Positions 47,585-48,151 of a DNA stretch of 64,000 nucleotides are shown piece after piece (positions within the stretch are counted from its first letter, which is position 1; the number at the start of each line of letters is the position of its first letter). The translations under genes and the position numbers were made by a program. Under the pieces are notes generated by a model, which was not told where the DNA came from, did no database searches, and saw nothing but the letters and a program-made list of their open reading frames with translations. The DNA is from Octopus bimaculoides. Its lineage: Eukaryota. The DNA lies in NCBI RefSeq assembly GCF_001194135.2, contig NC_068981.1, positions 28,567,896-28,631,895 of the forward strand, written 5' to 3'.

Positions 47585-48147
47585 TATTATGGTAGTTTGA
47601 CCTTAGAGTCGATCTTAGCGCGAGGCATAATAATGCCCTTATATAAATAAATATATTTTGGGGAATAAATGATGGATTTTTCCCTTATGAGGTTGTTTTT
47701 CACGCTAGTTACTTGATAAATTCTTATAAAAGAATTTATCCTAATTTTGAATTAAATAAATATATAGCCAGAATATATTCAGTACTGAATTTATTCTGAA
47801 AAAAACACATGTACCGAGATGCAATTCGAAAAAGTTCGCCACTTACATAGATATATAGAGATAAACAATCTTCTATGTACTATGCTGGATACATGAGGTG
47901 TTCGTCTGGTATTTTGATTTTTTGTTTATTTTTATGTGTCTTGACCATACTATACTGATGAGTAGAAGTTGCATAATACTGTAATAATTACGAAATCATG
48001 ATCTATAGTTTAGTCTGTTTTTAAGGTGCTAGCTTTGAGAGTTGCATTTCTTCGCGTTCGGTAAAAATGTGTTTATTATGGTAGTTTGACCTTAGAGTCC
48101 CTCTTAGCGTGAGGCATTCATGTATAGTAATGCCCTTATATAAATAA

Positions 48148-48151
<4 letters not shown>
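47585..48151 (+). mobile_element. Non-coding ~489-bp unit with direct terminal repeats and an internal hammerhead ribozyme (retrozyme-like or solo Penelope pLTR)
   Basis: tattatggtagtttgaccttagagtc...cttagcg.gaggcat...aatgcccttatataaataaatat occurs at 47585-47654 and 48074-48151 (period 489). No ORF; several internal hairpins. Confidence 0.8.
47949..48009 (+). ncRNA. Type I hammerhead ribozyme with complete canonical core
   Basis: Stem I ACTATA(47949-54)/TATAGT(48004-09); CTGATGA 47955-61; stem II GTAG/TTAC (G10.1-C11.1) extended by TTGCA/TGTAA; GAAA 47992-95; palindromic helix III ATCATGAT; predicted cleavage after C48003 (AUC). Confidence 0.88.

What the first reader, a model, noticed from the sequence alone, without database searches (positions are those of the whole stretch)
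47585..48151. Candidate cephalopod retrozyme: ORF-less, hairpin-rich 489-nt unit with direct repeats and one hammerhead
The unit has 1.15 periods, no coding capacity and an intact hammerhead. It also has strong internal hairpins: a 26-nt one at 47715-47740, a near-perfect 30-nt palindrome cagaatatattcagtactgaatttattctg at 47769-47798, and the GGCAT/ATGCC stems. A permuted copy lies 22 kb away. This fits non-LTR retrozymes, which are tandem hammerhead-bearing repeats processed into small circular RNAs and thought to be mobilised by Penelope-like RTs; such RT remnants occur in this window. I know of no description of this particular family but cannot verify novelty. The array may continue into the adjacent (TA)n tract and gap.
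Basis: partly seen in the sequence, partly recalled or inferred. Interest (0 to 1): 0.82.

Follow-up and report, generated by a model that had tools for sequence, protein, structure and literature searches.

The report
Lone hammerhead-bearing repeat in octopus DNA
A non-coding, about 490-base repeat in an octopus genome carries one complete self-cutting hammerhead RNA motif inside a strongly folded RNA domain, so it looks like one decayed copy of the known "retrozyme" class of parasitic circular-RNA elements, but this locus alone cannot make a circle and no family of copies could be shown.

Summary
There is a 489-nt direct-repeat period covering about 1.17 units, no ORF longer than 54 aa, the stated hairpins, and a complete type I hammerhead. 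The hammerhead has helix I 6 bp, CUGAUGA, helix II 4 bp plus a distal stem, GAAA and the palindrome UCAUGA, with cleavage after C48003. My descriptor expects 0.003-0.007 such motifs per window by chance.

New support: the 240-nt domain holding the ribozyme folds only in the ribozyme's polarity (z -5.3 against -0.3). That is an RNA signature, not a DNA palindrome.

Against the reading:
- No Rfam hammerhead model matches it.
- Only one ribozyme is assembled, and the sequence beyond the gap is not unit-like.
- The copy 22 kb away covers only the roughly 200-nt repeat module (S). It lacks the ribozyme half (X) and abuts a mariner fossil.
- No further copy could be retrieved.

A Penelope-like element remnant does lie 9 kb away, but its own ribozyme is a different, minimal type.

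Verdict: probably a solitary, more-than-unit-length insertion of a non-LTR-retrozyme-like element, so a new member of a known kind. Tandem arrays, a multicopy family and circular RNA are all unproven. Interest is moderate to low.

The parts
47578..47768 (+). Module S, copy A1. It is 5'-truncated by about 20-25 nt relative to copies A2 and B. Its first 77 nt (47578-47654) form direct repeat DR1.
   Evidence: blastn self-hits and the three-way alignment. Identity to B is 94.9% (75/79) in the internal part, then 59% beyond about 47768.
47624..47637 (+). GGCAT/ATGCC hairpin. The stem is kept in A1, A2 and B. The loop is 4 nt in A1 and 12 nt in A2 and B.
47715..47740 (+). 26-nt perfect hairpin with an 11-bp stem and a 4-nt loop. 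Copy B keeps the stem through an insertion in one arm plus a matching substitution in the other.
47769..47798 (+). 30-nt near-perfect palindrome (7+5 bp with one mismatch). It lies at the S/X boundary.
47816..48050 (+). Module X, a Y-shaped structured RNA domain. The basal stem pairs 47816-47845 with 22-nt-plus partner 48022-48050. One arm is a long hairpin and the other arm is the hammerhead. There is no other copy in the window.
   Evidence: strand folding on the plus strand gives -73.0 kcal/mol, z -5.30, 0/200 shuffles as good. The minus strand gives -37.2 kcal/mol, z -0.32. No further blastn hit.
47849..47941 (+). Long hairpin arm. A 20-bp stem (47849-47868 with 47922-47941) contains 4 G-U pairs and no mismatch, and is followed by two 6-bp stems.
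47949..48009 (+). Type I hammerhead motif:
- helix I, 47949-47954 with 48004-48009 (6 bp);
- CUGAUGA, 47955-47961;
- helix II, 47962-47965 with 47988-47991 (G10.1-C11.1, 4 bp), plus a distal 6-bp stem, 47968-47973 with 47980-47985;
- GAAA, 47992-47995;
- helix III and loop 3, the palindrome UCAUGA, 47996-48001;
- U16.1 at 48002 and C17 at 48003.
The predicted cut lies between 48003 and 48004.
   Evidence: Direct reading, folding and the descriptor with shuffles. No Rfam match.
48048..48151 (+). Module S, copy A2. It has the full 5' end (48048-48066, shared with B) followed by DR2 (48067-48151). It runs into the (TA)n tract.
   Evidence: A2 is 91-92% identical to B, apart from a 17-nt indel.
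48137..48349 (.). (TA)21 tract (48137-48178) followed by a 171-N assembly gap (48179-48349). The tract sits where S has an AT-rich stretch, so the rest of S (about 100 nt) may be hidden here.
25877..26071 (+). Module S, copy B. Its 5' end is full and sharp and matches that of A2. It has no X module and no hammerhead. It directly abuts a mariner HTH_48 fossil (25794-25877).
   Evidence: HTH_48 scored E 4.6e-4 unrepaired and 1.3e-7 after I repaired one stop and one frameshift by hand.
57195..58509 (-). Context: a Penelope-like element remnant (RT, HTH_animal and GIY-YIG-like ORF fragments). It belongs to the candidate class of helper elements. It is not adjacent to the unit and shares no sequence with it.
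   Evidence: hits carry RVT_1 and PF26215; 66% identity to O. sinensis LOC118763458. (82% nucleotide identity to L002). (its own minimal hammerhead).

Best explanation
The locus is one old insertion, about 1.2 to 1.6 units long, of a roughly 489-nt non-coding retroelement of the non-LTR-retrozyme type. Each unit has two modules. S is a roughly 200-nt module with short perfect hairpins. X is a roughly 240-280-nt RNA domain that folds into a Y shape, and one arm of the Y is a canonical metazoan type I hammerhead.

Proposed life cycle of the family, all inferred:
1. A multimeric transcript is made.
2. It is cut after C48003 (AUC|U). The ribozymes act in pairs, because helix III is only 2-3 bp and is the palindrome UCAUGA.
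3. A host RtcB-type ligase closes the monomer into a circle.
4. A Penelope-like reverse transcriptase copies the circle for more than one turn.
5. The cDNA is inserted, giving the head-to-tail S-X-S arrangement seen here.

Shown here: the motif, the strand-specific RNA fold, the partial tandem, the lack of coding capacity, and a Penelope-like element in the neighbourhood.

Not shown: transcription, cleavage, circles, mobilisation, and the existence of other ribozyme-bearing copies.

As assembled, this locus has a single ribozyme, so it could not release a monomer. It is most likely a dead copy.
For: - The hammerhead has every conserved core position, G10.1-C11.1, a 6-bp helix I, a 4-bp helix II, and a short helix III formed by a 6-nt palindrome. 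This is the architecture given for canonical metazoan type I ribozymes in PMC4209133.
- Chance expectation is 0.0033-0.0067 motifs per 64 kb.
- The X domain folds at z -5.30 on the ribozyme strand and z -0.32 on the other strand. The difference comes from G-U pairs: 4 in a 20-bp stem with no mismatch. This argues for selection at the RNA level in the ribozyme's polarity.
- The virtual 489-nt circle folds at -123.1 kcal/mol, z -4.75. Background windows had a median z of +0.25.
- The S-X-S order, with the upstream S 5'-truncated and the downstream S starting at the same point as copy B, is what a copy longer than one unit, or a partial tandem, gives.
- GC is 31% and there is no ORF.
- A canonical C-terminal-endonuclease Penelope-like element lies in the window.
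- The unit size is within the published range of 51-972 bp, and monomeric derivatives are reported (bioRxiv 10.64898/2026.07.22.740005).
Against: - No Rfam hammerhead family reports the motif, even at E<=10 on a 91-nt slice. The 22-nt extension of helix II is a possible cause, but I could not test that.
- Only one ribozyme is present, and the sequence after the gap is unrelated.
- The only other related copy (B) carries S without X. S may therefore be an independent repeat.
- X has no second copy in the window or in 84 kb of other cephalopod DNA, of which only about 21 kb is from an Octopus species.
- At 489 nt, the unit is above the 150-450 nt usually quoted for invertebrates.
- There are no expression data.
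Confidence: 0.5

Rival explanations
1. S and X are unrelated. S is an ordinary short interspersed repeat of about 200 nt. Two copies happen to flank X, or flank it through a local duplication. X is a solitary dispersed hammerhead-bearing RNA element or relic, not part of a tandem retrozyme unit.
For: - Copy B has sharp S boundaries on both sides and no X.
- S folds equally well on both strands (z -2.87 and -5.05). X folds only on the plus strand. The two modules therefore differ in kind.
- X has no second copy in the window.
Against: - Two S copies 489 nt apart in the same orientation are unlikely by chance. I estimate about 2% even if S has around 10^5 copies. This is my own estimate from three copies in 64 kb.
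- The truncated-then-full order of the two S copies is what a partial tandem predicts.
Confidence: 0.2
2. The unit is a solo pseudo-LTR or other terminal fragment of an autonomous Penelope-like element. In that case its hammerhead is the ordinary ribozyme of such elements.
For: - Canonical Penelope-like elements carry hammerheads in their pseudo-LTRs and insert as partial tandems (PMC4209133, PMC8557442).
- One such element lies 9 kb away.
- Vertebrate retrozymes are related to pseudo-LTRs (bioRxiv 10.64898/2026.07.22.740005).
Against: - The element in the window and its relatives in L001 and L002 carry a different ribozyme. It is the minimal type: no helix III (GAAAC-GUU), an unpaired base after CUGAUGA, and a 5-bp helix I.
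- There is no sequence similarity between the unit and the flanks of that element here or in four fetched loci.
- The nearest RT ORF is 9.2 kb away on the opposite strand.
Confidence: 0.1
3. The hammerhead is a chance motif in AT-rich, hairpin-rich junk DNA and has no ribozyme history.
For: - No Rfam match.
- There is one copy only.
- A genome of a few gigabases would hold some hundreds of chance hits to my loose descriptor, by extrapolation. This window was picked because it contains one.
Against: - Features that the descriptor does not require are also present: G10.1-C11.1, a 6-nt palindromic helix III, and canonical 6-bp and 4-bp helices.
- The motif is one arm of a domain whose fold is specific to the same strand (z -5.30 against -0.32).
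- A second motif of canonical shape occurs in the same window.
Confidence: 0.1
4. The unit is a DNA-level palindromic element (MITE or foldback transposon), or X is a box C/D snoRNA-like gene.
For: - The arms of X pair over about 30 nt.
- There is a weak resemblance to snoRNA family snR60/Z15 (14.4 bits, E 3.8), driven by UGAUGA plus a terminal stem.
Against: - The minus strand of X does not fold (z -0.32), so the pairing is not a DNA inverted repeat.
- No terminal inverted repeats with target-site duplication are seen at the X boundaries.
- The snoRNA score is far below the gathering score of 41, and there is no CUGA box D before the 3' stem.
Confidence: 0.03

Closest known systems
Metazoan non-LTR retrozymes (Cervera and de la Pena 2020, PMC7229834; the mollusc example is Mytilus galloprovincialis, units of about 350-390 bp)
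   Same: - Type I hammerhead with a 6-bp helix I, a 4-bp helix II and a weak palindromic helix III.
- ORF-less, low-GC unit of a few hundred nt.
- Highly self-paired predicted RNA.
- Head-to-tail arrangement.
- Co-occurrence with Penelope-like elements.
   Different: - Only about 1.2 units and one ribozyme are assembled here. Published families are dimers up to large multimers.
- The unit is longer (489 nt).
- Helix II carries a 22-nt stem-loop extension instead of a small loop 2, so loop-loop tertiary contacts are not evident.
- No Rfam hammerhead model matches.
- Expression and circularity are unknown.
Minimal hammerheads of Penelope-like elements (Cervera and de la Pena 2014, PMC4209133)
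   Same: - Type I topology.
- Expected to act as dimers.
- Retroelement context.
- Such an element, with such a ribozyme, is present in this window and in O. sinensis.
   Different: - The ribozyme of the Penelope-like family sampled here lacks helix III, has an unpaired base after A9 and has a 5-bp helix I.
- The ribozyme in the finding has the canonical architecture and no sequence similarity to it.
Schistosoma Sm-alpha and newt satellite 2 hammerhead repeats (named from my own knowledge and from the introduction of PMC7229834)
   Same: Short, non-coding, repeated elements that carry a type I hammerhead which needs dimerisation.
   Different: Those are high-copy tandem or SINE-like families with documented transcripts and cleavage. 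Here neither copy number nor activity is known.
Plant LTR retrozymes (PMC4918200)
   Same: A non-coding element with direct repeats flanking an internal region, and a hammerhead.
   Different: - Plant elements have type III ribozymes inside each LTR, a PBS and PPT, 4-bp target-site duplications and high GC.
- Here there is a single type I ribozyme in the internal part, no PBS or PPT, and 31% GC.

Membership tests
Metazoan non-LTR retrozyme | Type I hammerhead with a complete catalytic core and three helices | tested here: met
   CUGAUGA, GAAA, U16.1 and C17 are present. Helix I is 6 bp, helix II is 4 bp with G10.1-C11.1, and helix III is the palindrome UCAUGA.
Metazoan non-LTR retrozyme | Motif recognised by a curated hammerhead covariance model (Rfam Hammerhead_1 and relatives) | tested here: not met
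   No hit at the gathering threshold or at E<=10 on 881 nt and on 91 nt. The cause may be the 22-nt helix II extension. I could not test a trimmed sequence.
Metazoan non-LTR retrozyme | Head-to-tail tandem repeats with a ribozyme in each unit (at least a dimer) | tested here: inconclusive
   1.17 units and one ribozyme are assembled. An assembly gap follows, and the post-gap sequence is not unit-like. Collapse of a tandem array in a short-read assembly cannot be excluded.
Metazoan non-LTR retrozyme | Short, non-coding, low-GC unit without LTR, PBS or PPT | tested here: met
   The unit is 489 nt with 30.7% GC. The longest ORF is 54 aa, and there was no protein or Pfam hit. The size is above the usual 150-450 nt but within the 51-972 bp of the 2026 survey.
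Metazoan non-LTR retrozyme | Monomer RNA predicted to be highly self-paired | tested here: met
   Circular fold z -4.75. The X domain gives z -5.30 on the ribozyme strand only.
Metazoan non-LTR retrozyme | Multicopy family in the genome | not testable with these tools
   No cephalopod genome can be searched by nucleotide sequence here. In the window, S has 3 copies and X has 1. Nothing was found in 84 kb of fetched loci or in two metagenome scans.
Metazoan non-LTR retrozyme | Expressed as linear and circular monomer RNA; self-cleavage | not testable with these tools
   No transcriptome or wet-lab data are available.
Metazoan non-LTR retrozyme | Co-occurrence with Penelope-like elements in the same genome | tested here: met
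   A Penelope-like remnant lies at 57195-58509 on the minus strand. Homologues carry RVT_1 and HTH_animal, and one is from O. sinensis.
Penelope-like element pseudo-LTR (solo) | Sequence identity with the termini of an RT/GIY-YIG element, or adjacency to such an ORF | tested here: not met
   There is no similarity to the flanks of the Penelope-like element in the window or to L001-L004. The nearest ORF is 9.2 kb away on the other strand. Only one family was sampled.
Penelope-like element pseudo-LTR (solo) | Minimal hammerhead architecture (no or minimal helix III, extra base after A9, long helix II, short helix I) | tested here: not met
   The motif in the finding has the canonical architecture. 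The octopus Penelope-like family shows the minimal type.
Box C/D snoRNA | Box C plus box D next to a terminal stem; Rfam family score | tested here: not met
   The best hit, snR60/Z15, scores 14.4 bits against a gathering score of 41. There is no CUGA before the 3' stem.
MITE / foldback DNA transposon | Terminal inverted repeats at the DNA level with target-site duplication | tested here: not met
   The pairing in X depends on G-U pairs and is lost on the minus strand (z -0.32). No TIR or TSD is seen at the boundaries.

The most novel reading that the evidence does not exclude
Octopuses harbour an active, so far undescribed family of roughly 490-nt hammerhead circular RNAs, which would be the first cephalopod retrozyme. 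It would have an unusual two-module design: a hairpin module S plus a ribozyme domain X with an extended helix II. This locus would be one collapsed or decayed copy of that family. A still more exotic version, which I consider much less likely, is that X descends from an exogenous viroid-like circular RNA that was reverse-transcribed into the genome.
Probability: 0.3. Interest if true: 0.5.

Novelty: new member of a known kind. Interest (0 to 1): 0.33.

Why it matters
Retrozymes are the only known ribozyme-driven route to abundant small circular RNAs in animals. They are documented in cnidarians, a bivalve, insects and many vertebrates. In the held literature I found no description for cephalopods.

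If the family is real and expressed, three things would follow:
- The class would extend to a lineage known for heavy RNA-level regulation.
- It would provide a natural hammerhead with a long helix II extension.
- It would offer a case for testing the proposed dependence on Penelope-like elements, since the local element of that type carries a clearly different ribozyme.

If it is only a single dead copy, it is a routine repeat annotation.

Tried and rejected
- **Rfam.** I searched at the gathering threshold on the whole window and in E-value mode on 881 nt and on 91 nt. No hammerhead family was reported.
- **Six-frame protein search.** I searched the unit's ORF fragments against 5.8 billion proteins, hoping to pull ORFs called in other copies. 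There were 4003 word candidates and none reached E<=10.
- **Sampling cephalopod DNA around Penelope-like homologues.**
  - I fetched four loci, 84 kb in all.
  - Three come from an ENA sample that shares only the Penelope-like element with the window.
  - One is from O. sinensis. None contains S or X.
- **Metagenome scans.** Two exact-pattern scans of JGI metagenome contigs, one with an S core and one with the hammerhead, found nothing.
- **Is X a diverged mariner HTH_48 coding segment, as the context of copy B suggested?** There was no significant alignment and no Pfam hit. Rejected.
- **Does the mariner fossil resume downstream of copy B, which would make S a clean insertion?** No transposase domain was found in 26060-27300. 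Unresolved.
- **Strict descriptor for minimal hammerheads of Penelope-like elements.** It found nothing. Manual inspection then found that element's ribozyme.
- **Pfam on the Penelope-like ORF fragments.** It gave nothing. The element was identified through homologues instead.
- **Failed runs.** One folding script timed out.

Full report
**What is there**

The window is AT-rich (35.6% GC), full of microsatellites and holds 14 assembly gaps. It shares SINE-like repeats at 75-90% identity with an Octopus sinensis chromosome. I therefore take it to be an Octopus genome.

A 77-nt stretch (47578-47654) recurs at 48067-48151, which gives a period of 489 nt. Identity is 83.5% over 85 alignment columns. 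Counting substitutions only, it is 92.1% (70/76), and one 8-nt indel sits in a hairpin loop. Tandem Repeats Finder does not report the repeat because there are only 1.17 copies. A (TA)21 tract and a 171-N gap follow directly.

**Two modules**

Comparison with the related sequence 22 kb upstream splits the unit in two.

Module S is about 200 nt and is present three times:
- A1 at 47578-47768, which lacks the first 20-25 nt.
- A2 at 48048-48151, which has the full 5' end and then runs into the TA tract.
- B at 25877-26071.

A2 and B start at the same nucleotide and are 91-92% identical apart from a 17-nt indel. A1 and B are 94.9% identical (75/79) in the internal part. Identity then falls to 59% beyond about 47768.

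Module X (about 47769-48047) contains the hammerhead. It has no counterpart in B or anywhere else in the window.

The '22-kb permuted copy' is therefore real, but it is a copy of S only. Its 5' edge abuts a mariner-type HTH_48 fossil at 25794-25877. That fossil scores E 4.6e-4 as it stands and 1.3e-7 after I repaired one stop and one frameshift by hand. No transposase sequence resumes downstream.

**The hammerhead**

Read directly from the sequence, the motif is:
- 5'-ACUAUA (helix I);
- CUGAUGA;
- GUAG ... UUAC (helix II, with G10.1-C11.1);
- GAAA;
- UCAUGA;
- U C | UAUAGU (helix I).

All invariant core positions are present. Helix I is 6 bp. Helix II is 4 bp and is extended by an internal loop and a 6-bp distal stem. 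Helix III is 2-3 bp formed by a perfect 6-nt palindrome. PMC4209133 describes canonical metazoan type I hammerheads in these terms: helix I 6 bp, helix II 4 bp, and helix III 1-2 bp capped by a small palindromic loop, which is why they work as dimers.

A structural descriptor that I wrote finds two hits in the window, this one and a weaker one at about 39.1 kb on the minus strand. The expectation from 300 dinucleotide-preserving shuffles is 0.0033-0.0067 per window.

Against this, no Rfam hammerhead family reports the motif at the gathering threshold or at E<=10, even when only 91 nt are searched. The 22-nt extension in place of loop 2 is a plausible reason, but I could not test a trimmed sequence. 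The only weak Rfam resemblance is to a box C/D snoRNA (14.4 bits against a gathering score of 41), and there is no box D.

**Structure**

- The virtual 489-nt circle folds at -123.1 kcal/mol, z -4.75. Twelve other 489-nt windows had a median z of +0.25, and ten of the twelve were above -1.6.
- The most informative result is strand asymmetry. The X domain (47810-48056) folds into a Y shape with a basal stem, a long hairpin and the hammerhead. It gives -73.0 kcal/mol, z -5.30, with 0 of 200 shuffles as stable.
- Its reverse complement gives -37.2 kcal/mol, z -0.32.
- The difference comes from G-U pairs, for instance four in an uninterrupted 20-bp stem.
- A DNA-level palindrome would fold on both strands. 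Module S does exactly that (z -2.87 and -5.05).
- X therefore bears the mark of an RNA-level structure in the same polarity as the ribozyme. This makes a chance motif or a foldback DNA transposon unlikely.

**Coding capacity and relatives**

The longest stop-to-stop ORF is 54 aa. A concatenated six-frame query found no protein at E<=10 among 4003 candidates. Pfam found nothing.

**Penelope-like elements**

A remnant lies at 57195-58509 on the minus strand. It has ORF fragments with the YVDD reverse-transcriptase motif, the following domain and a GIY-YIG-like end. Pfam did not recognise the fragments. Their concatenation did hit 190 proteins at E<=1e-10. The listed hits carry RVT_1 and/or PF26215 (HTH_animal), and one is O. 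sinensis LOC118763458 at 66% identity. The DNA is 82% identical to that O. sinensis locus over 1350 nt.

The 3' untranslated region of this family holds its own ribozyme, of the minimal type. In O. sinensis it reads GACAC-CUGAUGA-A-[helix II]-GAAAC-GUU|GUGUU. A C-G to U-A compensatory change in helix II is seen against the ENA relatives. The copy in the window is decayed.

That ribozyme has no helix III and no sequence similarity to the one in the finding. The flanks of that element do not match S or X. The unit is therefore not a solo pseudo-LTR of this family. Other families were not sampled.

**How many ribozymes at this locus**

One. With a 489-nt period, a second hammerhead would lie at 48438-48498. 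The gap ends at 48349, and the sequence from 48350 on is unrelated to the unit. The TA tract begins where S has an AT-rich stretch, so the gap can hide the rest of S. At face value the insertion is 1.2-1.6 units long.

Short-read assemblers do collapse tandem arrays and leave gaps beside them, so a longer array is not excluded. Nothing here supports one.

**Interpretation**

The best reading, at confidence 0.5, is a copy longer than one unit of a non-LTR-retrozyme-like element whose unit is S+X. The upstream S is 5'-truncated. The downstream S starts at the family's 5' end. This is the pattern expected from copying a circular or multimeric template (model in PMC7761336), and also from partial-tandem insertions of Penelope-like elements (PMC8557442). 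The cleavage, ligation and reverse-transcription steps are inferred from those papers. None was tested here.

The main rival, at 0.2, is that S is an independent interspersed repeat and X is a solitary hammerhead element. Copy B and the different folding behaviour of S and X speak for this. The improbability of two co-oriented S copies 489 nt apart speaks against it.

The remaining rivals are a solo pseudo-LTR (0.1), a chance motif (0.1), and a MITE or snoRNA (0.03).

**Novelty and limits**

Non-LTR retrozymes are an established class, and a mollusc example exists (PMC7229834). In the held literature, octopus or cephalopods co-occur with hammerhead or retrozyme terms only in papers on other subjects.

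No cephalopod genome could be searched by nucleotide sequence with the tools available. Copy number, tandem arrays, conservation of the ribozyme and expression therefore all remain open.

I rate this a probable new member of a known kind, seen as a single and probably dead locus.

Noticed in passing
window 57195-58509 (minus strand); ribozyme relic 57295-57338; L002 10937-10985; L001 about 11618-11665 and its inverted twin about 8094-8141: A Penelope-like element remnant whose 3' UTR carries a minimal hammerhead. The core is intact in the O. sinensis copy and decayed in the window. In both ENA copies G12 is A. One C-G to U-A compensatory pair in helix II separates the lineages. L001 shows the classic head-to-head pair of ORFs.
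   Followed up: partly
window 39045-39136 (minus strand): A second hammerhead-like motif of canonical shape: CUGAUGA, GAAA, the palindrome CAUAUG, and a 6-bp helix I. Three G-U pairs weaken helix I. Position 10.1-11.1 is A-U, and loop 2 is 50 nt. The sequence is unique in the window. Two descriptor hits in one window, against an expectation of about 0.005, suggests the genome holds real hammerhead-bearing elements.
   Followed up: partly
window 45250-46207, and 60375-61026 (minus strand): An inverted duplication (76.7% over 722 nt, fold z about -13) of the 3' end of a LINE-like family. Its ORF tail reads KKCFLIDVSIP...IPIIVGALG. The same tail follows a zf-RVT motif at 60375-61026. Pfam recognises only zf-RVT (E 2.1e-5).
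   Followed up: partly
window 25794-25877: A fossil of a mariner-type transposase HTH_48 domain (profile positions 15-42). It ends exactly at the 5' edge of S copy B, and no transposase sequence follows downstream.
   Followed up: yes
window 47715-47740 against 26027-26053: The 11-bp hairpin of module S is kept in copy B through a 1-nt insertion in the 5' arm and a matching A-to-T change in the 3' arm. This hints that the hairpin is maintained. Only two sequences are available.
   Followed up: no
window 1881-2072, 39454-39646, 54631-54823, and L002 5670-5861: A SINE-like repeat of about 190 nt with a tRNA-like look is shared with O. sinensis at 88-90% identity. This is the main evidence that the window comes from an Octopus species.
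   Followed up: no
window gaps at 16838, 17974, 21969, 33348, 34763, 43403, 48179, 49838 and others: Many of the 14 assembly gaps are bordered by (TA)n tracts. The gap next to the unit may therefore reflect a general failure of the assembler at TA microsatellites rather than a collapsed tandem array.
   Followed up: no
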